Position numbers and translations under genes: made by a program. 64,000 nucleotides of DNA from NCBI GenBank assembly GCA_038087875.1, contig JAXLNO010002777.1, positions 124,001 to 188,000 on the forward strand, in the 5' to 3' direction. Under the pieces are notes generated by a model. It saw only the letters and a program-made list of their open reading frames with translations. It searched no databases and was not told where the DNA came from. The DNA comes from Malacoraja senta (lineage: Eukaryota). Each line of letters begins with the position of its first letter. Positions within the stretch are counted from its first letter, which is position 1. Below are positions 6,975 to 58,645 of this stretch, in pieces.

Positions 6975-7137
6975 TGGGGGCAGTTTAGGGTGTGCACTGG
7001 ACCACCAGGGTGGGGGACAGTTCAGGGGGTGCACTGGGCCACCAGGGTGGGGGACAGTTTAGGGTGTGCACTGGGCCACCAGGGTGGGGGGGCAGTTTAG
7101 GGTGTGCACTGGACCACCAGGGTGGGGGACAGTTTAG
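6975..7137 (+). repeat. Minisatellite, ~37-bp unit x4
   Basis: cagtttagggtgtgcactggaccaccagggtggggg repeated. Confidence 0.85.
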
Positions 7138-7200
7138 GTGAGTGTAGCTGCTGTTCAAGGCTGAGATCAGGGGGAGCATTAGCATTGACATAGTGCCTAC

Positions 7201-7427
7201 CCCAGCCTCTCTTTGCTCTCCTCCGGAGTGAGTTGGTCGAAGGTCTGTGCGCCATCTCTCCCCATGAAGGCATCATGATCGAACTGGAAGCCGTTCTGGT
7301 CGTTTGGATCCCGCTCATCCAGGTCCTTGGAATGGTGCACGCGCTCCTTCTTCTCCGAGGTTGGTTTGCAGAATGCCACGGAGGCACATAGGGCCAGCAA
7401 CCCCAACAGGCTCCGCCGCCTCATCAT
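7201..7427 (-). CDS. RCN3: Reticulocalbin-3-like, first coding exon (signal peptide plus CREC N-terminus)
   Basis: [32 protein letters not shown]...[10 protein letters not shown]...[15 protein letters not shown]. Acceptor cttcctgcag lies 3 nt before the ATG; donor gtaggc at 7200. CREC family is certain. The RCN3 call over RCN1/CALU rests on [21 protein letters not shown] and linkage to a paired-less Pax6 paralog. Confidence 0.85.
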
Positions 7428-8994
7428 CGACTGCAGGAAGCACACACACGTTTAGACACGTACAGACACAGGGACTGAGAGCCATGGGCAGGCGAAAAAC
7501 CCAGCACAAACTCCCCCAATCCCCACAGCCTGGCGTGAAATCAGTCACAGCCACCCTGTTCTTTGTCCCACTAATGCTGCTTTAACCAATTGTCAATGTA
7601 TTCAATCAAGAATGCTCCACAGGACATTTCCAATACTGAGGGCACTAAATACAAATTATTATTTTTGTAATGTTACTACTTCCAGGCATTGCATTTCAGG
7701 TTACAGCTTGCACAGGAAACCTCAGTCTTCTTCCCCATACGTGGCCCTTTTGACTGTAACGTAAAGCTTTTCTCTTGTATTACAAACTTTATTGCAGGAC
7801 TAACAATTAAATCTGTCTACTTTTATTTCGGATAAACAACCCCCTCCCAAAGTGATAAAAGAATGTCAGTAGAATATAAATTTTAAACAGCATGGCATGC
7901 AAATGTAATTACATCCATTGCAGGTAATATTGAGGAATTAACAATTACTTTATTATTTATGGGACAGAGAACATGCTGCAAAAGCTGAAGTAGCAGATCA
8001 CACTCCCCTCAAGATTAATCAACAGATATCCCATTACTCGAGTAACTCAGCGGGACAGGCAGCATCTCAGGAGAGAAGGAATAAGGGTCTAGACCCGAAA
8101 CTTCACCCTTTCCTTCTCTCCAGAGATGCTGCCTGTCCCGCTGAGTTACTCCAGCATTTTGTGTCTGTCTGCAGTTCCTTCCCACATACATCTTATTACA
8201 CTACTCCACAAGTTAAGACTGTAAGATTTCCCTTTAACATAAAATCATCTTGGAAGTTTACTACATTGATATATTCAGCATTATTAATGTGCAAGATAAA
8301 ATTATTGTACCCTACTCAAATCAAAAAGGTGTTCATCAAATTTAATGCCAGATAATTGTTGCCACCTTAAAGAATTATAACTGTTCCCAAGAACCGGTTG
8401 ATCAGCTCTGCAGTTAGTGCTTAAACATGCGATAGTCATTTACTAAAATCAAAGTTCAGAATATGCAATACAAAATAGAACCTTTCCATTACCATCTTAG
8501 CGGCATTTATAGATTCTCAGCTCTATTTTGATATCACAGATCCGTCACGATCTTCAGTAATTATTTAAAAATTCTCCCAGAGCTCTCCAATTAGCTTTTT
8601 AAAATCACCCCCAAAACTGTCATTTTATACCTTACAAGTTTTAAATAACATCGAATTGTGCTGAAGCTTTTATCAGCTTGCAAAACAAAACTCTTGACAT
8701 CTCTTTATCGAATTAATTAATTTGATACAGTGAGAGGCACCAAAGCACAATAATAATTCTGATCAATAAAAATCTGAAAGGGAGCTATGTGCAAACTTCA
8801 GAACTCAGCTTTTTTTGCACAAATTAAATTGAAACTCCAAGGTTTTGGGTAATAAAAGTTGAAATGTTTTTACTACAACACACACATACACACACACAAA
8901 ATCAAAGTAGAGTAAACGATTAGCCTTACCAGTGGGGTTATCAATGAGTGTGATAAGAAACTGCAATAATCACGCCCTGGACCCTGAATAAATA

Positions 8995-9200
8995 CTCACC
9001 GCGGCCGGAGAGAGGATTGTAAACTTCCCCAATCAGCGCCGGCCTTTCTCCCGGCTCGTTGGCCGAGCGCCTTTGTCACGGCTCCTGCCATTGGTCGAGC
9101 GTCCCCGGGTTTCCCATTGGCTGGGAATCGCCACGTTGACACGGGGAGCGACCACTGCGCCTGCGCGTCGCACGCGTTGCCTTCTGGTACTTGTAGTCGT
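8995..9200 (-). promoter_or_regulatory. RCN3 proximal promoter (CpG-rich; CCAAT boxes, NRF1-like site)
   Basis: CCAAT/ATTGG at 9029-9033, 9090-9094 and 9116-9120; TGCGCCTGCGC (NRF1-type) at 9156-9166; CpG density far above the flanks. Confidence 0.65.
9000..9030 (-). other. RCN3: Probable non-coding exon 1 of RCN3 (3' boundary at 9000; 5' end uncertain)
   Basis: Strong minus-strand donor G|GTGAGT at 8999 at the edge of the CpG-rich region; a second donor G|GTAAGG at 8929. The first coding exon has its own acceptor, so an upstream exon must exist. Confidence 0.55.
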
Positions 9201-9414
9201 TTTTTTAAATTTATTTGAAAAAAGTTAAAATGGCATCTGTGAAGAAAGAAGAAGGCCAGCATTTGCTAAACAACGTTAAAAGACCAGGATTATAAAAGCA
9301 AAAATGAGAGGAAAAGCGAGTTAAAACGACCACGCGTGATGGGCATGTCATCCTGCCAATGGTGTTTGGCTTTGGTTTGATGGACGTGGCAGTTAGTGAA
9401 TGGGGGCAGGAACA

Positions 9415-9740
9415 GCCCGCCCTCTGTTAGGGCCGACCAATCACAGCGCTCCGGGGCTCGGCAAGGTCCCGCCCTCTGTCAGGGGGTCGACCAATCATAG
9501 CGCGACGGGGCCCGGCGAGGTCCCTCCCTACGTCAGGGTCGCCCAATCACAGCGCTCCGGGGCTCGGCAAAGTCCCGCCCTATGTCAGGGTCGACCAATC
9601 ACAGCGCGTCGAGGCTCGGCATAGTCCCGCCCTACGTCCGGCTCGACCAATGATAGTGCGATGGGACTCGTCAAAGACCCGCCCCCTGTCAGGATCGGCC
9701 AATCACAGGTCGCCGGGGCCCGGCGCGGTCCCGTCCCCCG
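9415..9740 (+). promoter_or_regulatory. Tandem array of six ~52-bp GC-box + CCAAT units in the FBXO47-side promoter
   Basis: CCAAT at 9437, 9491, 9543, 9595, 9647 and 9699 (spacing 54,52,52,52,52), each preceded by cccgccc or ccctccc. Confidence 0.85.
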
Positions 9741-9779
9741 GTGATTGACGGGCTGGTTTGGGCGGGAGCGTGGCGGCGG

Positions 9780-9935
9780 CGAGTTGTTCGCGGGTGGACG
9801 GGCGGGCGGGCGCGAGGCCGTAGGCGGCGCTGCAGCTCAAACCATCACCTACTGTAAACAAAGCCTGGAGGCACCAACACTATAGGCCACACAGGATAAG
9901 GTGGCTGCTCTATATCTAGCTCGCCAAACAAGGAG
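9780..9935 (+). other. FBXO47: Probable non-coding first exon of FBXO47 (5' end uncertain)
   Basis: GC-rich sequence directly downstream of the CCAAT array, ending at donor GAG|GTGAGG (9936). The first coding exon begins right after an AG, so an upstream exon is implied. Confidence 0.45.
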
Positions 9936-10291
9936 GTGAGGAGTGAAAACAACATAATTATGGAGGAAAAGAAACAATGAAGACTTATTTTTCCGTCAAA
10001 AGCCCGCAAATCTCTTTAAACAAAAACAGAACCCAAGCTGTTGCAACTATTCTTTCTGTCAGAAGGGGTGTTGTTCTGGTGCCAGGCTGCATGCACCCTG
10101 CGGAAATGGGTTGGTGAGGGAGACTTGTCTTGAACCAACCTTTAAAAGTCAATGCAAATCCTTGCAGCGAAGTCCTGAGAGGCTGCAGGTCAATCTGGTG
10201 GAAATATCTATCAAACTGCAGCTGCTTGAAGCCCTTGGGGGGAAAACCCCCCAAAAATGCTGGAATTACTCAGCAGGTCAAGCAGCGTCTG

Positions 10292-10328
<37 letters not shown>

Positions 10329-13320
10329 CTTCGACGTTTTGGGTTTTATGACCTTTAGCCAGTTCTTTTGCTTGGTTAATGTGGTTCAATGGTTCACCAC
10401 CCAGCTTCTGCACCAAAGACTTCAGGAAACATCAGTCCAAAACTCTTAACAACATATTAGAACAATCACTTTATTTCCATCTCTCTTCTATTTTCCCCTC
10501 TAGCTTTAAATTGTTAAGTGTCCATCGCTTTGCAAAAGATGCATAAGAGTTTGGTTTAATGATACAACATTGAAACAGGCCCTTTGGCCCATTGAGTCCA
10601 AGCCGACCATTGATCATCCATTCACACTAGTTCTACGTTATCCTGTTGAATCTCATCCATTCCCTACACATTAGGGGCAATTTAATTTATAGAGGCCAAC
10701 TAATCTGGGATGTGGGAGGAAACACAACGAGAACTTGCAGATTCCTCACAGACCACCCGAGGTCAGGATAAAACCTGGGTCTCTTGCTATGAGCCAGCAA
10801 CTCCACCAGCTGTGCCACCCTATAGAGATTCACTGAAATTGTGGGAATGGGGGACTTGAGGTACATTGGTAGACTGGAAAAATTGGGGTTGTGCTCCTTG
10901 GAAAGAGGAGGAAGAAGGAATTGCAGATGCTGGTGCACAAAAGTAGGCGCAAAGTGCTGGACTAACTCAGCGGTCTGAAGAAAGGGTCCCGACCCCAAAA
11001 CCTCACCAATCACATGTTCTCCAGAAATGCTGCCTGACCCGCTGAGTTAATCCAGCTCTACGTTTTACTTAGAATTGAGGAGGTTGTCAGGGATCAGATA
11101 GTGGTATTTAAAATGTAGAGGATGTAAACAGAGAAATTGACTCATTGACAGTGGGACCAGTAACAGAATGAAGGTGATTGACGGAATAAGCCAAAGTAAA
11201 AGATTTTCTTGCAGAGTGAATTCAGTAAAACTGATTATCTGACACCCTCAGAATTTTGGTGGAGCTAGATTAGCAGATCGCTGTACTATTGGATTTTCTT
11301 CCTATTCATACCCAAACACACATAATAATCATTTTTTTTACAAATTACACAATAATGTAATAAATTGTGATGAGCAAGAAATACACTAGTGCTCAAGACC
11401 TTGGCTTCAGTTGCAGATGTACCTATGTTCCTCACCTTTCGTGCTCTGGATCCTGATCCAGTTTTGGCTGCAGACAAATGTGTAGGAAGGAACCGCAGAT
11501 ACTGGTTTACCCTGAAGATAGACACAAAATGCTGGAGTAACTCAGCGGGATTGGCAGCATCTCTGGAGAGAAGGAATGGGAATTTGGGCTGCATTACCAG
11601 GAGACAGATCCACTGTATCTTGGTACACATGGCAATAATAACCCAATACCAATACAGATCTAATTTTGACCAGTGGCCTATATGTCACAAAGCTTTATGA
11701 TCACAAAGACATGGTGTATCAGAACATTGTTCTTGTGCTAAATGACTACAAAGAATAAGGACTTATTGAGCCATAGATTTATTTTGGAAGAAGTGAGCTG
11801 CCCAGTAATTGGAATAAAAATGTTTAAGCTTTATTCGAGTGTGAGCAAAATTACAGCTATGCCTATAAACTGTAGATCCAAGTCTGGTTTAAGCTTTGAT
11901 GAATTTATTCCTTGGAAGAACCAAGCTATTCAACAAACATTTTGACAAGAACACCTTTGTTGGGAAAGAACAAAGAAGGATAACTGTAGGATGCAGTTAA
12001 ATTGTGGTTTTATAATGGCCTTTATTGCAATCGTGTCTTTTATGCCTTTTGCCAGAACTGTCTGTCACCCAAACTTTCCATAAGTCAGAAATGCAGACGA
12101 TTGGGATCACAAAAGTTGCGCTGGTTGGTTAATTACCTCAGTTAATTTTGGGCCTCAGTTAGAATTAGCTAACTAGCATAGTAGATCTGAATTATGGATT
12201 CAAAACATGCTGAATCACAGAATGTGAGACTGGGGCGTTTCAACATATTTTGTGTATTCTTGACAGGAGTATTTCAAATTGAGAGGTACATATTTGCTTT
12301 CCTTTTCAGAGAAAGCTGAAAGTATTTTGAAAAGGCACCTTGGAGAGAACAAGGGCAATTGAGCAGTCTTTATGAAATCATCAGAAAAACAGAAGCAAGA
12401 AGACTCCATGAAGGTTAGCAGCAAACCCAAGTAAGATTATGGCCAGGGACTTTATTTCAGGTCAACTTTTAGAAACTGGTTACAGTACAGGGAATCTGCT
12501 TTGTTGAATAGTAATAGTTAAGCTCTGCATTTTCAAAGAAATCTTTTGCATAGCTGTACTTTTGGGGGAAGATTTATTAAAATTAGATTTTTAAGAGTCA
12601 ACCCCATTGGTCTATAGTGCTTGTCCCACTGTTTTCTAAAATAAGATAAAATTGTGATAATAGGTTATAATGACAGGCATTTTAATGTGACTACTGAGCT
12701 CAATTACCACATGGCACAATTATCTGGTAAAAATATACTCTAGTTCATGAGGACTGAAAATGTGTGTACTGAAATAGTCATGGGCTTAAGGGAAAGAAAG
12801 AGACTATCTGTGGTAAAGAATGTAAATTATGGTCATAATTCCCAGCTTCTTACAAAGTACTGGATTGTGTCTGAAAAAACAAATTAGTTTGATCTTTTGT
12901 GGATAATATAAGTGTGGATATTAGTTTAGTAGATTATTCCTATAGTAGGACTCTTCTATTCAGCTGTTTGTATGCCATATCACAAGAGTGGAAAGGAACT
13001 TTCTGTCAGATGCATGTTCGTGCTGCAAACGCTGAAACGATTTTAAAAATGGCGTTAAATGTTATCATTATTTTAACTTTTGCAAACAGTTTAAAACTAT
13101 CATGTTAGTCAGATTTTGTGCTTTGAATTGTCTTTCAAATGGTTTTCTAAAGCTGAATGTTAAGAGTGACCACCGGTGTGACGGACAGCTTTAGATTATG
13201 CTTCTGCCTAACCAATAAAGCCTTAAGCAAAAATCAAAGGAAAGAGATAAAGAAAGTAGTCTGAAGCATGCATTTTTTTACATGTAAAATAAGGTAATCT
13301 GTTTGTTTTGCAAATAATAG

Positions 13321-13525
13321 ATGAAACCTATGGAGAGAGATGAGGTACCACTGAGAATAAATGCTTTCACCCTCATTCCAAATCAAAAATACAGAAGAAG
13401 TTGCAGACATCTACAATCCAAGAAAGGTGGTGATAGACTGGAAAACTTCCACATACAGTATAACTGCGGCTATTTCCAGTTAATACCAGTTGAAATCTTT
13501 CACAAAGTGTTGTGTTACCTTTCAG
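13321..13525 (+). CDS. FBXO47: F-box only protein 47, coding exon 1
   Basis: MKPMERDEVPLRINAFTLIPNQKYRRS...GYFQLIPVEIFHKVLCYLS matches the FBXO47 N-terminus (FTLIPNQK) and F-box start. AG at 13319-20, GT at 13526. Confidence 0.9.
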
Positions 13526-13649
13526 GTACAATATCACAATAAGTAAATTTTTAAAGTAAATAATTTTTTCTCCTTGTATTGATTTCTGAGTAATTTTAAC
13601 TCCATCTCTCCTGAAAATGTTGATTCACGAGAATCAACATTTTCGTGAA

Positions 13650-14501
13650 TCAGCTGTTGTCGGCCTCATTAAAGGGGGCAATGAGGAGGAGTATAGAGAC
13701 ATAATAAGTAACTTTGTGGAGTGGAGTGCACACAATAACCTCCATCTTAACACCACAAAAACCAAGGAGATAGTTGTGGACTTCAGGAGGGGGAGGAGGA
13801 GGACTCAAGCAACACCAATCACCATTAAGGGCACTGAGGTGGAGGTGGTCGCTAACCACAGGTACCTTGGTGTGCAGCTTGACAGTGAGCTGGACTGGAA
13901 GTGTCATGGAGGCGGTGTACAGGAAGGGACAAAGCCGACTGTATTTTTTAAGGAGGCTGAGGTCATTTAACATCTGCCAACCCCTACTGTGCAGTGTCTA
14001 CCATTCAGTGGTGGCCAGTGCTCTGTTTTTTGCTGTGGCCTGTTGGGGAGATGGCGCCCGCATAGCGGACAAAAACAGACTGTACAAGCTGATCAGGAAG
14101 GCCGGCTCAGTGGTCGGGGCTGAGCAACGAACGGTCCAGCAGGTGGCAGAGGCCAGAACTCTGAACAAACTGGGTTCTATAATGACCAACCCCACTCACC
14201 CACTCCATGCCCTGAAGGTGATCAAGAGCAGCATCTTCAGTCAGAGACTGATTGCACCAATGTGCAAAACTGAGAGACATAGGAAGTCCTGTTTACCAGC
14301 TGCTATAAGGTTATATAATGCGCATAAATAACTGCACTTTTTTTTTCATTAATTGTATTTTAACTTGTATTTTAACTTGTATTTTAACTTGTTAAGTATG
14401 GAAGCTATTTGAGGAAATGTGTGGTGTTATGTCTGTCTTGAAGCTGTCGTGGCACTGTAATTTCCTGTAAAGGATTATTAAAGGTATATCTATCTATCTA
14501 T
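13650..14501 (+). mobile_element. 5'-truncated Rex1/Babar-type LINE (RT C-terminus + 3' UTR), frameshifted
   Basis: SAVVGLI...NNLHLNTTKTKEIVVDFRR...YLGVQLDSELDW, then a frameshift into MEAVYRKGQSRLYFLRRLRSFNI...PAAIRLYN; 3' end attaaag followed by (tatc)n tail. Confidence 0.85.
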
Positions 14502-57464: not shown

Positions 57465-58645
57465 CAGTGGTCACACATTGGTGATGGTGATCACAAGTTG
57501 ATAACAGTGATCACATTGATGATAGTAGTCACAAATTGGTGATGGTGATCACAGGATGATGGTGATCAAGTTGACGATGATGATCAAGTTGATGATGGTG
57601 ATCACATTGATGATGGTGATCAAGTTGATGATGGTGATCAAGTTGTTGATGATGATCAAGTTGATGATGGTGATCACATTGATGATGGTGATCACGTTGA
57701 TGATGGTGATCATGTTGATGATGGTGATCAAGTTGATGATGGTGATCACGTTTATGATGGTGATCAAGTTGATGATGGTGATCATGTTTATGATGGTGAT
57801 CAAGTTGATGATGGTGATCACGTTGATGATGGTGATCACGTTGATGAGGGTGATCATGTTGATGATGGTGATCACGTTGATGATGGTGATCACGTTGATG
57901 ATGGTGATCATGTTGATGATGGTGATCACGTTGATGATGGTGATCACGTTGATGATGGTGATCACACGTTGATGATGATGATCAAGTTGATGATGGTGAT
58001 CACGTTGATGATGGTGATCACACGTTGATGATGGTGATCACATTGATGATGGTGATCAAGTTGATGATGGTGATCACACGTTGATGATGGTGACCACGTT
58101 GATGATGGTGATCACATTGATGATGGTGATCACGTTGATGATGGTGATCACGTTGATGATGGTGATCACGTTGATGATGGTGATCAAGTTGATGATGGTG
58201 ATCACACGTTGATGATGGTGACCACGTTGATGATGGTGATCACACGTTGATGATGGTGATCACACGTTGATGATGGTGATCAAGTTGACGATGGTGATCA
58301 TGTTGATGATGGTGACCACGTTGATGATGGTGATCAAGTTGATGATGGTGATCACAAGTTGATGATGGTGATCAAGTTGATGATGGTGATCAAGTTGATG
58401 ATGGTGATCACACGTTGATGATGGTGACCACGTTGATGATGGTGATCACGTTGATGATGGTGATCAAGTTGATGATGGTGATCACACGTTGATGATGGTG
58501 ACCACGTTGATGATGGTGATCACACGTTGATGATGGTGATCACGTTGACGATGGTGATCAAGTTGACGATGGTGATCACGTTGATGATGGTGATCAAGTT
58601 GACGATGGTGATCAAGTTGACGATGGTGATCACACATTGATGGTG
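57465..58645 (+). repeat. 18-bp minisatellite (gatgatggtgatcacgtt)n, roughly 60 copies
   Basis: Directly visible, with variants cac/caa/cat and 20-bp units (cacac). Confidence 0.95.

What the first reader, a model, noticed from the sequence alone, without database searches (positions are those of the whole stretch)
9415..9770. Helically phased promoter array: six ~52-bp units each pairing a GC/E2F6-type box with a CCAAT box, upstream of a meiotic gene
Seen: CCAAT boxes spaced 54,52,52,52,52 bp (52 bp is about 5 helical turns). Spacer bases vary between units but CCAAT is intact in all six. Three units contain TCCCGCC, and a reverse copy GGCGGGA lies at 9761-9767. Known: NF-Y and Sp1 cooperate at TATA-less promoters, TCCCGC is the E2F6 (PRC1.6) motif used to silence meiotic genes in soma, and FBXO47 is a meiotic prophase gene. 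Inference: tandem amplification built a multivalent activator/repressor switch, and copy number could tune expression.
Basis: partly seen in the sequence, partly recalled or inferred. Interest (0 to 1): 0.7.

Follow-up and report, generated by a model that had tools for sequence, protein, structure and literature searches.

The report
Amplified CCAAT-box module, skate FBXO47 promoter
In skates, a 52-base piece of the very old control region of the meiosis gene FBXO47, carrying a CCAAT box, has been copied head-to-tail 6 to 14 times and the CCAAT boxes have stayed intact while the rest drifted; it is a clean natural example of a promoter enlarged by tandem duplication, not a new kind of element.

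Summary
A 52-bp x 5.9 tandem array (9416-9724) has six in-phase CCAAT boxes and sits in a CpG island. It lies between a reticulocalbin-like gene (- strand) and FBXO47 (+ strand).

I fetched the orthologous locus from seven cartilaginous fishes. The array is orthologous and varies in copy number in three skates: 6 units in the window, 7 in Amblyraja and 14 in Leucoraja. Sawfish, electric ray, whale shark and chimaera carry one copy of the same module. In all of them it is followed by an inverted CCAAT box, an invariant E2F-type site (GGGCGGGA) and a conserved non-coding exon 1.

So the unit is not a transposon or satellite. It is an amplified piece of an ancient core promoter.

Across 27 units CCAATCACAG is far more conserved than the spacers (P about 0.0005 after removing CpG-capable columns). 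The GC/E2F6-type box is intact in only about 60% of units and is not distinguishable from spacer. The 52-bp phasing is simply the repeat period.

NF-Y binding, the TSS and any dosage effect are inferred, not shown. A CR1 monomer array with CCAAT boxes was noted elsewhere in this genome.

The parts
9414..9728 (+). Six tandem units of 52-54 bp (TRF call: 9416-9724). Each unit reads: C-rich GC/E2F-like box, about 14 nt, CCAATCACAG, about 25 nt of CpG-rich spacer. The GC-type boxes start at 9416, 9467, 9521 (broken, TCCCTCCC), 9573, 9625 and 9677.
   Evidence: orthologous arrays at L002 5825-6169 and L003 6245-6968
9437..9446 (+). NF-Y-type CCAAT box 1 (CCAATCACAG)
9491..9500 (+). CCAAT box 2 (CCAATCATAG)
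9543..9552 (+). CCAAT box 3 (CCAATCACAG)
9595..9604 (+). CCAAT box 4 (CCAATCACAG)
9647..9656 (+). CCAAT box 5 (CCAATGATAG, the most diverged flank)
9699..9708 (+). CCAAT box 6 (CCAATCACAG). Positional counterpart of the single forward CCAAT box of sawfish, whale shark and chimaera.
9729..9739 (+). C-rich box after the array (TCCCGTCCCCC). Counterpart of GTCCCACCCC in sawfish and GTCCCACC in electric ray. Probable right-hand microhomology for the original duplication (inference).
9742..9748 (+). Decayed inverted CCAAT box (TGATTGA). It reads TGATTGG in sawfish, electric ray, whale shark and chimaera, and TGATTGA in all three skates.
9756..9767 (+). Single-copy E2F-type element GTTTGGGCGGGA. The 12-mer is invariant in six species; the core GGGCGGGA is also present in the electric ray.
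9770..9935 (+). Putative non-coding exon 1 of FBXO47. The 5' end (TSS) is not mapped. The 3' end is set by the donor GAG|GTGAGGA, with the intron starting at 9936.
   Evidence: The donor is invariant in five elasmobranchs, 176-214 bp after the E2F element. Exon 2 begins directly at an acceptor.
12310..12413 (+). Counterpart of an alternative internal exon that opens the coding sequence of Leucoraja erinacea FBXO47-like isoform X1. In Leucoraja it has both an acceptor and a donor. The window coordinates are projected from an ungapped 350-bp alignment.
   Evidence: 97% identity to L003 and 98% L003 to L002, against about 90-94% for the surrounding intron
13321..13526 (+). FBXO47 first coding exon (ATG at 13321, contains the F-box)
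   Evidence: 88.6% amino-acid identity to Chiloscyllium punctatum XP_072444822
9000..9200 (-). Divergent promoter and short non-coding exon 1 of the reticulocalbin-like EF-hand gene. The minus-strand donor GCG|GTGAGT has its last exon base at 9000. CCAAT lies at 9029 and ATTGG at 9090 and 9116; CCACGTTGACA lies at 9131-9141.
   Evidence: The segment is conserved in sawfish, electric ray and chimaera. The same divergent gene pair is present in bamboo shark, sawfish, two skates and chimaera.

Best explanation
The array is a skate-lineage tandem amplification (6-14 copies) of the distal half of an ancient FBXO47 core promoter. The ancestral promoter is still single-copy in sawfish, electric ray, whale shark and chimaera. 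It reads: C-rich box, forward CCAAT box, C-rich box, inverted CCAAT box, E2F-type site (GGGCGGGA), then a short non-coding exon 1. In skates the roughly 52-bp segment between the two C-rich boxes was duplicated and then expanded, probably by slippage or unequal exchange between those boxes (inferred). The three skates share at least three unit subtypes, so the array predates their split and later grew or shrank in blocks. Each unit keeps a good NF-Y-type site (CCAATCACAG), and that block has been held by purifying selection. The most likely function is a multi-site NF-Y platform just upstream of the FBXO47 start. It would keep the CpG-island promoter open and feed the conserved proximal E2F-type element, which is the better candidate for cell-cycle or germline gating. 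The array may also compensate for the proximal inverted CCAAT box, which is mutated (ATTGG to ATTGA) in exactly the lineage that has the array. Shown here: the anatomy, orthology, amplification history and CCAAT constraint. Inferred: NF-Y occupancy, the TSS position, and any effect on expression.
For: The array and its motifs are confirmed.

Orthologous arrays occur at the same position in Amblyraja radiata (6.6 copies) and Leucoraja erinacea (14.1 copies).

No array is found in Pristis, Narcine, Rhincodon or Callorhinchus, which each have one module.

The six-species alignment has invariant CCAATC, TGATTG and GTTTGGGCGGGA.

The exon-1 donor is invariant in five elasmobranchs, and exon 2 starts at an acceptor.

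Across 27 units there are 117 parsimony steps over 52 columns. CCAAT takes 1 step where 11 are expected. CCAATCACAG takes 5 where 22.5 are expected and is the best 10-mer window.

The result holds after dropping CpG-capable columns: P=0.003 for CCAAT and P=0.0005 for CCAATCACAG. Within the window alone, motif columns also beat spacers: 0/10 against 14/22 variable non-CpG columns, P=0.0007.

Unit subtypes A, B and C are shared across species.

The unit is absent from the rest of the window and the first five fetched loci, about 275 kb in all.

All five bases of CCAAT and the immediate flanks matter for NF-Y binding, and promoter CCAAT boxes sit about 80 bp upstream of the TSS (PMC3730095).
Against: There is no transcript, chromatin or binding data, so the TSS is inferred only from the conserved donor and core elements.

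A Leucoraja isoform uses an exon inside intron 1, so an additional start site cannot be excluded.

The conservation test rests on one locus in three related species. Units were anchored on the CCAAT position, and the tree was built from the same 52 columns.

CCAAT boxes work in either orientation, so the array could also, or instead, serve the divergent reticulocalbin-like gene, whose exon-1 donor lies about 415 bp from the array's left edge.

The link between loss of the inverted CCAAT box and the amplification is a single co-occurrence.
Confidence: 0.65

Rival explanations
1. One reading: the repeated TCCCGC boxes form a multivalent E2F6/PRC1.6 landing pad. They would silence this meiotic gene in somatic cells, paired unit by unit with NF-Y activator sites, so the array is an activator/repressor switch whose copy number tunes expression.
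For: TCCCGC is the E2F6 site enriched in mouse E2F6 peaks at CpG islands (2153 of 2533 peaks; PMC8195999). TCCCGC precedes 16 of the 27 CCAAT boxes. It shows a nominal excess of conservation before CpG correction (6 steps against 13.5 expected, P=0.014), slightly better than the Sp/KLF core CCGCCC (P=0.12). An invariant E2F-type site lies just downstream. Copy number differs between species.
Against: After removing CpG-capable columns the box is indistinguishable from spacer (P=0.2-0.3). It is lost in 41% of units, while CCAAT is lost in 4%. No CACGTG E-box partner occurs on the FBXO47 side. According to the same paper, the motif is not specific to germline genes. Fbxo47 is not mentioned in that paper's main text. 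The sequence equally fits an Sp/KLF GC box.
Confidence: 0.2
2. A neutral promoter minisatellite. Slippage in a CpG island produced the array, it persists by chance, and the intact CCAAT boxes reflect low mutability of an A/T-containing, CpG-free block rather than selection.
For: CpG-capable columns do vary about twice as much as others (80 steps in 27 columns against 37 in 25), so mutational heterogeneity is real. Copy number changes freely between species. One unit in Leucoraja has lost its CCAAT box and 10 bp.
Against: Among non-CpG columns only, CCAATCACAG still shows 5 steps against 14.8 expected (P=0.0005). Its single-copy counterpart is conserved from chimaera to skates. The array has persisted across three genera with diverged spacers.
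Confidence: 0.15
3. The array mainly serves the divergent reticulocalbin-like gene, or it acts as a spacer or boundary within the bidirectional CpG island rather than as an FBXO47 activator.
For: The two genes are head-to-head in every species where the neighbour was visible. CCAAT boxes are orientation-independent. The reticulocalbin-side promoter has its own CCAAT boxes, one of which shares a 12-nt flank with a unit in inverted orientation.
Against: The amplified module is the one that directly abuts the FBXO47-side E2F element and exon 1 in all species. The array ends about 45-210 bp from the putative FBXO47 exon 1, whereas its left edge lies about 415 bp from the other gene's exon-1 donor. 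The reticulocalbin-side elements are conserved separately and were not amplified.
Confidence: 0.12
4. The unit is transposon-derived, for example promoter monomers of a LINE or U3 repeats of an LTR that were co-opted by the gene.
For: An earlier scan note (s1-177990) describes a CR1 element in this genome with 148-bp 5' monomers that carry a CCAAT box. Human LTR12 has about 41-bp CCAAT repeats (PMC11853044).
Against: The unit aligns to single-copy promoter sequence at the same position in four outgroup species. No other copy exists in the window or the first five fetched loci. No transposon ORF or terminal structure flanks it. I could not compare it with the CR1 monomer sequence, which was not available.
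Confidence: 0.03

Closest known systems
ERV9 / LTR12 U3 enhancer repeats (human)
   Same: Both have 5-17 head-to-tail units of about 41 bp placed just upstream of a transcription start. Each unit has a conserved CCAAT box bound by NF-Y plus a second factor site, and copy number varies (PMC11853044; PMC3730095).
   Different: LTR12 is a dispersed retroviral LTR, and its partner motifs are GATA and MZF1. The skate array is single-locus, derived from the gene's own promoter, has 52-bp units, and its partner is a GC/E2F-like box.
Multi-CCAAT cell-cycle and housekeeping promoters (for example the TOP2B CCAAT pair with an Sp1 site)
   Same: Several NF-Y sites combine with a GC box and, here, an E2F-type site next to the start site of a TATA-less CpG-island promoter (PMC4982600).
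   Different: Those promoters have two to a few boxes at a preferred 31-32 bp spacing, and the boxes are not recent duplicates of one another. Here 6-14 boxes at 52 bp are paralogous copies.
Promoter minisatellites (VNTRs) made of transcription-factor sites, such as the SV40 21-bp GC-box repeats, the TYMS 28-bp repeats and the ALOX5 Sp1-site repeats (from general knowledge, not checked here)
   Same: A short promoter module carrying a factor site is tandemly repeated, with copy number as a possible expression variable.
   Different: Those cases are mostly polymorphic within a species and evolutionarily young. This array has persisted across three genera with diverged spacers and a measurable constraint on one motif. 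Polymorphism within a species was not tested here.
E2F6/PRC1.6-controlled germline-gene CpG islands (mouse)
   Same: A meiotic gene with a CpG-island promoter and a TCCCGC/GGGCGGGA element at the start region (PMC8195999).
   Different: No E-box partner is present, there is no methylation or binding data, and Fbxo47 is not named in that paper's main text. The best-conserved site is single-copy, not the repeated one.
LINE 5' promoter monomers (mouse L1; skate CR1 noted in s1-177990)
   Same: Tandem promoter-like monomers that carry a CCAAT box.
   Different: Those belong to mobile elements and are near-identical within one copy. The present units are 63-87% identical within the window and belong to a host gene promoter.

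Membership tests
Promoter minisatellite / VNTR | Head-to-tail copies with a constant period | tested here: met
   TRF reports period 52 with 5.9, 6.6 and 14.1 copies in three skates.
Promoter minisatellite / VNTR | Copy number differs between genomes | tested here: met
   There are 6, 7 and 14 units in three species. Variation within a species could not be tested.
Promoter minisatellite / VNTR | Lies in the promoter, just upstream of the transcription start | tested here: inconclusive
   The array lies in a CpG island and ends 32 bp before the invariant E2F-type site and about 210 bp before the conserved exon-1 donor. No transcript data were available.
NF-Y-dependent multi-CCAAT promoter | Intact CCAAT pentamer with favourable flanks | tested here: met
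   26 of 27 units have CCAAT, and most read (G/A)ACCAATCACAG. The pentamer and its flanks are required for binding (PMC3730095).
NF-Y-dependent multi-CCAAT promoter | The motif is under constraint relative to its surroundings | tested here: met
   CCAATCACAG shows 5 steps against 14.8 expected in non-CpG columns, P=0.0005.
NF-Y-dependent multi-CCAAT promoter | NF-Y occupancy and dependence of transcription on it | not testable with these tools
   This needs ChIP or CUT&RUN and reporter assays.
E2F6/PRC1.6-repressed germline CpG-island promoter | TCCCGC / GCGGGA site at the start region | tested here: met
   GGGCGGGA at 9760-9767 is invariant in seven cartilaginous fishes. Repeated TCCCGC occurs in 3 of the 6 window units.
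E2F6/PRC1.6-repressed germline CpG-island promoter | The repeated boxes are conserved as E2F6 sites | tested here: not met
   The box is intact in 16 of 27 units and is not different from spacer after the CpG correction (P=0.34).
E2F6/PRC1.6-repressed germline CpG-island promoter | MGA/MAX E-box CACGTG nearby (present at a subset of targets) | tested here: not met
   There is no CACGTG between 9200 and 9950 (read). CACGTT lies on the reticulocalbin side at 9132.
E2F6/PRC1.6-repressed germline CpG-island promoter | E2F6 binding and somatic CpG-island methylation | not testable with these tools
   This needs skate ChIP and bisulfite data.
Transposon-derived promoter repeat (LTR U3 repeats, LINE monomers) | Dispersed copies attached to a transposon body | tested here: not met
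   The only matches are the orthologous arrays and the single-copy chimaera counterpart, across the window and the first five fetched loci. No transposon ORFs flank the array. A whole-genome search was not possible.

The most novel reading that the evidence does not exclude
The array is an adaptive rebuild of a roughly 400-million-year-old meiotic-gene promoter. After, or together with, loss of the proximal inverted CCAAT box in the skate ancestor, the distal NF-Y plus E2F-like module was amplified. Copy number (6-14) now sets FBXO47 dosage or the sharpness of its germline on/off switch, with the repeated TCCCGC boxes adding PRC1.6 valency. That would be a documented case of compensatory promoter evolution by module amplification, with copy number as an evolvable dial for a meiosis gene.
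Probability: 0.15. Interest if true: 0.6.

Novelty: new member of a known kind. Interest (0 to 1): 0.4.

Why it matters
Tandem repeats of factor-binding modules in promoters are known, and multi-CCAAT promoters are known. What this locus adds is a complete natural history in one place. The single-copy ancestral promoter is still visible in four outgroups. The amplified state occurs in three skates with different copy numbers. There is a statistical signature that one motif (the NF-Y box) is kept while its partner and the spacers drift.

The locus also shows that the FBXO47 core promoter (forward CCAAT, inverted CCAAT, GGGCGGGA, non-coding exon 1) is conserved from chimaera to skates. That makes it a compact test bed for how NF-Y site number affects a germline gene. 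Leucoraja erinacea is a laboratory species in which this could be tested.

It does not open a new category of element.

Tried and rejected
1. Protein search with the ORF that reads through the array, hoping to catch homologous arrays in public assemblies: no candidates.

2. Exhaustive search with the 68-aa exon-2 peptide: only three short hits. It did give the shark identity through the cluster look-up.

Latimeria was not on record.

4. A mixed alignment used as a profile brought up the elasmobranch full-length proteins and unlocked seven loci.

5. Rfam scan of 7000-14000: nothing in the array; only sub-threshold miRNA-like hits on a hairpin at 8040-8150.

6. The bacterial promoter and terminator scan is irrelevant here.

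7. From the six window units alone I first concluded that the T of TCCCGC is poorly conserved, which would favour an Sp/KLF reading. With 27 units the T is well kept, and TCCCGC does slightly better than CCGCCC. I withdrew that argument, and the two readings cannot be separated by sequence.

8. A gecko locus (L006) has a small CpG island with two GGCGGGA sites 3.3 kb upstream of the coding sequence, but it is not alignable, so no claim is made.

9. The full spliced FBXO47 protein of the window was not submitted anywhere, because it has no reference and would have had to be typed.

Full report
**1. The observation**

Tandem Repeats Finder reports a single array at 9416-9724: period 52, 5.9 copies, 78% matches, score 348.
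- CCAAT begins at 9437, 9491, 9543, 9595, 9647 and 9699, giving spacings of 54, 52, 52, 52 and 52.
- TCCCGCC is at 9467, 9573 and 9625, and GGCGGGA is at 9761.
- A 15-mer centred on the CCAAT box matches six times in the window, all in the array, against 1.1 expected.
- The array lies in a CpG island (9001-10000; the array alone has GC 0.68 and CpG o/e 0.96), flanked by CpG-poor DNA.

The C-rich box before each CCAAT is CCCGCCC in five of six units and TCCCGC in only three.

**2. Genes and strands**

FBXO47 lies on the + strand.
- Exon-sized ORFs at 13321-13526, about 17.8 kb, 19.6 kb, 24.8 kb, 28.6 kb and 29.7 kb encode FBXO47.
- Exon 2 is 88.6% identical to the FBXO47-like protein of Chiloscyllium punctatum.
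- The ATG at 13321 follows a splice acceptor directly, so a 5' non-coding exon must exist.

Upstream on the - strand lies an EF-hand gene; I read its exon translations as reticulocalbin-like.
- Its first coding exon also follows an acceptor.
- A strong minus-strand donor sits at 9000/8999.

The CpG island is therefore a head-to-head promoter pair. The same gene pair is found in bamboo shark, sawfish, two skates and chimaera.

**3. Getting related loci**

Direct routes failed. A profile built from a long teleost FBXO47, the shark fragments and the window's own exons brought up full-length elasmobranch proteins. A cluster look-up then named 16 species.

DNA could be fetched for these loci:

| Locus | Species | Group |
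|---|---|---|
| L001 | Pristis pectinata | sawfish |
| L002 | Amblyraja radiata | skate |
| L003 | Leucoraja erinacea | skate |
| L004 | Callorhinchus milii | chimaera |
| L005 | Rhincodon typus | whale shark |
| L007 | Narcine bancroftii | electric ray |

The window is about 90% identical to both skates in intron and intergenic DNA, while the two skates are about 93-94% identical to each other. The window therefore comes from a third skate. This agrees with the earlier scan note s1-177990, which calls this genome a skate.

**4. The array is orthologous, varies in copy number and is specific to skates**

The window's 8900-10100 segment aligns to L002 5314-6559. It aligns to L003 in two pieces, window 8900-9736 with L003 5697-6561 and window 9416-10100 with L003 6650-7330.
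- TRF finds the same 52-bp array at L002 5825-6169 (6.6 copies) and L003 6245-6968 (14.1 copies, with a 208-bp higher-order period).
- Counting CCAAT positions gives 6, 7 and 14 units. One Leucoraja unit has decayed to TCAAT and is shortened by 10 bp.
- No such array exists within 10 kb upstream of FBXO47 in sawfish, electric ray or whale shark, nor in the chimaera promoter island scanned (L004 7400-8300).
- The unit is found nowhere else in the window or the first five loci.

**5. What was amplified**

The four non-skates have one copy of the module, in the same order:
- a C-rich box;
- a forward CCAAT box;
- a second C-rich box (in sawfish and electric ray);
- an inverted CCAAT box (TGATTGG);
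- GGGCGGGA(A/G).

A six-species alignment starting at the last skate unit has invariant CCAATC, TGATTG and the 12-mer GTTTGGGCGGGA. The chimaera's single box reads GTCGACCAATCAGAGGCCGGCG, almost the skate unit sequence. The unit is therefore a piece of the gene's own promoter, conserved since the chimaera-elasmobranch split (roughly 400 million years by general knowledge).

Downstream, the donor GAG|GTGAGGA is invariant in five elasmobranchs and lies 176-214 bp after the E2F-type element. This defines a conserved exon 1 that ends at 9935 in the window.

In sawfish the amplified segment is bracketed by two C-rich boxes about 55 bp apart. I infer that exchange or slippage between them set the 52-bp period.

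All three skates carry ATTGA where the other four species carry ATTGG. The proximal inverted CCAAT box is thus lost in the lineage that multiplied the forward one.

**6. Age and dynamics**

Units fall into subtypes by their 3' spacer.
- Type A is shared by the window and Leucoraja.
- Types B and C are shared by all three species.
- Type D is confined to Leucoraja.
- The last unit is type C in every species.

The ancestor of the three skates therefore already had at least three units. Later change came from block duplication and loss, not homogenisation. Within the window, units are 63-87% identical.

**7. Motif versus spacer**

Window alone: 28 of 52 columns are invariant.
- CCAAT is the only invariant 5-mer window and CCCGCCC is the joint best 7-mer window, tied with CCAATCA.
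- Among non-CpG columns, 0 of 10 motif columns vary against 14 of 22 others (P=0.0007).

All 27 units were aligned from CCAAT to CCAAT, and Fitch steps were counted on a unit tree. There were 117 steps in total, a mean of 2.25 per column.

| Motif | Steps observed | Steps expected | Note |
|---|---|---|---|
| CCAAT | 1 | 11.2 | |
| CCAATCACAG | 5 | 22.5 | most conserved 10-mer window |
| TCCCGC | 6 | 13.5 | nominal P=0.014 |
| CCGCCC | 9 | 13.5 | P=0.12 |

CpG-capable columns change about twice as fast as others, 80 steps in 27 columns against 37 in 25. Restricting the test to the other columns gives:
- CCAAT P=0.003;
- CCAATCACAG P=0.0005;
- GC/E2F-type box P=0.2-0.3.

Intact counts are CCAAT 26/27, TCCCGC 16/27 and CCCGCCC 17/27.

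It is not failed for the GC/E2F6 box.

Caveats: this is one locus, units were anchored on CCAAT, and the tree comes from the same short alignment.

**8. Phasing**

Of 24 CCAAT-to-CCAAT intervals, 17 are 52 bp, four are 53, and one each is 54, 51 and 42. The net drift is 2 bp in the window and in Amblyraja. The period is inherited with the repeat, so equal spacing is not independent evidence of selection for helical phase. The preferred spacing of CCAAT pairs reported in human promoters is 31-32 bp (PMC4982600). I found nothing that tests phase selection either way.

**9. Mechanism**

All five CCAAT bases and the immediate flanks are needed for NF-Y binding, and promoter CCAAT boxes sit about 80 bp upstream of the start (PMC3730095). 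NF-Y keeps regions upstream of start sites nucleosome-free (as reviewed in PMC11853044).

The best-supported reading is a multi-site NF-Y platform directly upstream of the FBXO47 start. It would feed an invariant proximal E2F-type site and might compensate for the lost inverted CCAAT box.

The E2F6/PRC1.6 idea is reasonable for the single-copy site. TCCCGC is the E2F6 motif at CpG-island promoters in mouse, but it is not specific to germline genes (PMC8195999). The idea is weak for the repeated boxes.

No data here bear on expression, so function is inferred (confidence 0.65).

**10. Comparison and novelty**

The closest working analogue is the LTR12/ERV9 U3 region, which has 5-17 units of about 41 bp, each with an NF-Y CCAAT box. 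That is a dispersed retroviral LTR, and this array fails the transposon tests. It is best filed as a promoter minisatellite made from a core-promoter module, which makes it a new member of a known kind. Its value is the unusually complete before-and-after series and a measurable constraint on one motif.

Noticed in passing
window 9020-9200 (minus-strand promoter); L001 1740-1890, L007 650-800, L004 7735-7860: The reticulocalbin-side promoter is deeply conserved too. It has two inverted CCAAT boxes followed by CCACGTTGACA, and in skates and sawfish a TTGCCTTCTGGTACTTGTAGT segment that resembles a ZNF143-type site. The CCAAT-plus-CCACG arrangement recalls ER-stress elements, which would suit an ER calcium-binding protein, but the spacing does not fit the textbook ERSE.
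   Followed up: partly
window about 12310-12413 (L003 9939-10042; L002 about 8938-9041): An alternative internal exon with an acceptor and a donor opens the coding sequence of Leucoraja erinacea FBXO47-like isoform X1 with 14 residues. The surrounding 350 bp are 97-98% identical among skates, against about 90-94% for the rest of the intron.
   Followed up: partly
window 9742-9748: In skates the former inverted CCAAT box reads TGATTGAC, which resembles a PBX/MEIS-type site. Many units also contain CTGTCA (a MEIS/TGIF-type core). These are possible new factor sites, but the GTCAG block is not significantly conserved.
   Followed up: no
window 8040-8150: A near-perfect hairpin made of two inverted copies of the common SINE-like core (GCTGCCTG.CCCGCTGAGTTACTCCAGCA). 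It gives sub-threshold miRNA-family hits in Rfam.
   Followed up: no
L003 6248-6969: The Leucoraja array has a 208-bp (four-unit) higher-order period of 3.5 copies, so recent growth was by blocks of four units. Amblyraja shows a weaker 105-bp period.
   Followed up: partly
L005 1365-1480: Whale shark has two CCCAATCACT boxes about 95 bp apart plus two ATTGG boxes. This may be an older, non-tandem duplication of the same box.
   Followed up: no
L004 8270-8700: In the chimaera, a long C/A-rich simple repeat (CACAGACACCCC-like) directly follows the FBXO47 core promoter.
   Followed up: no
window 57474-58633: An 18-bp satellite (63 copies, score 1684) built on GATGAT-like triplets.
   Followed up: no
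L006 6700-6800 (gecko Eublepharis macularius): A small CpG island 3.3 kb upstream of the FBXO47 coding start has GGGCGGGAG and GGCGGGAAA close to a TATAAAA. It may be the counterpart of the E2F-type element, but it is not alignable.
   Followed up: partly
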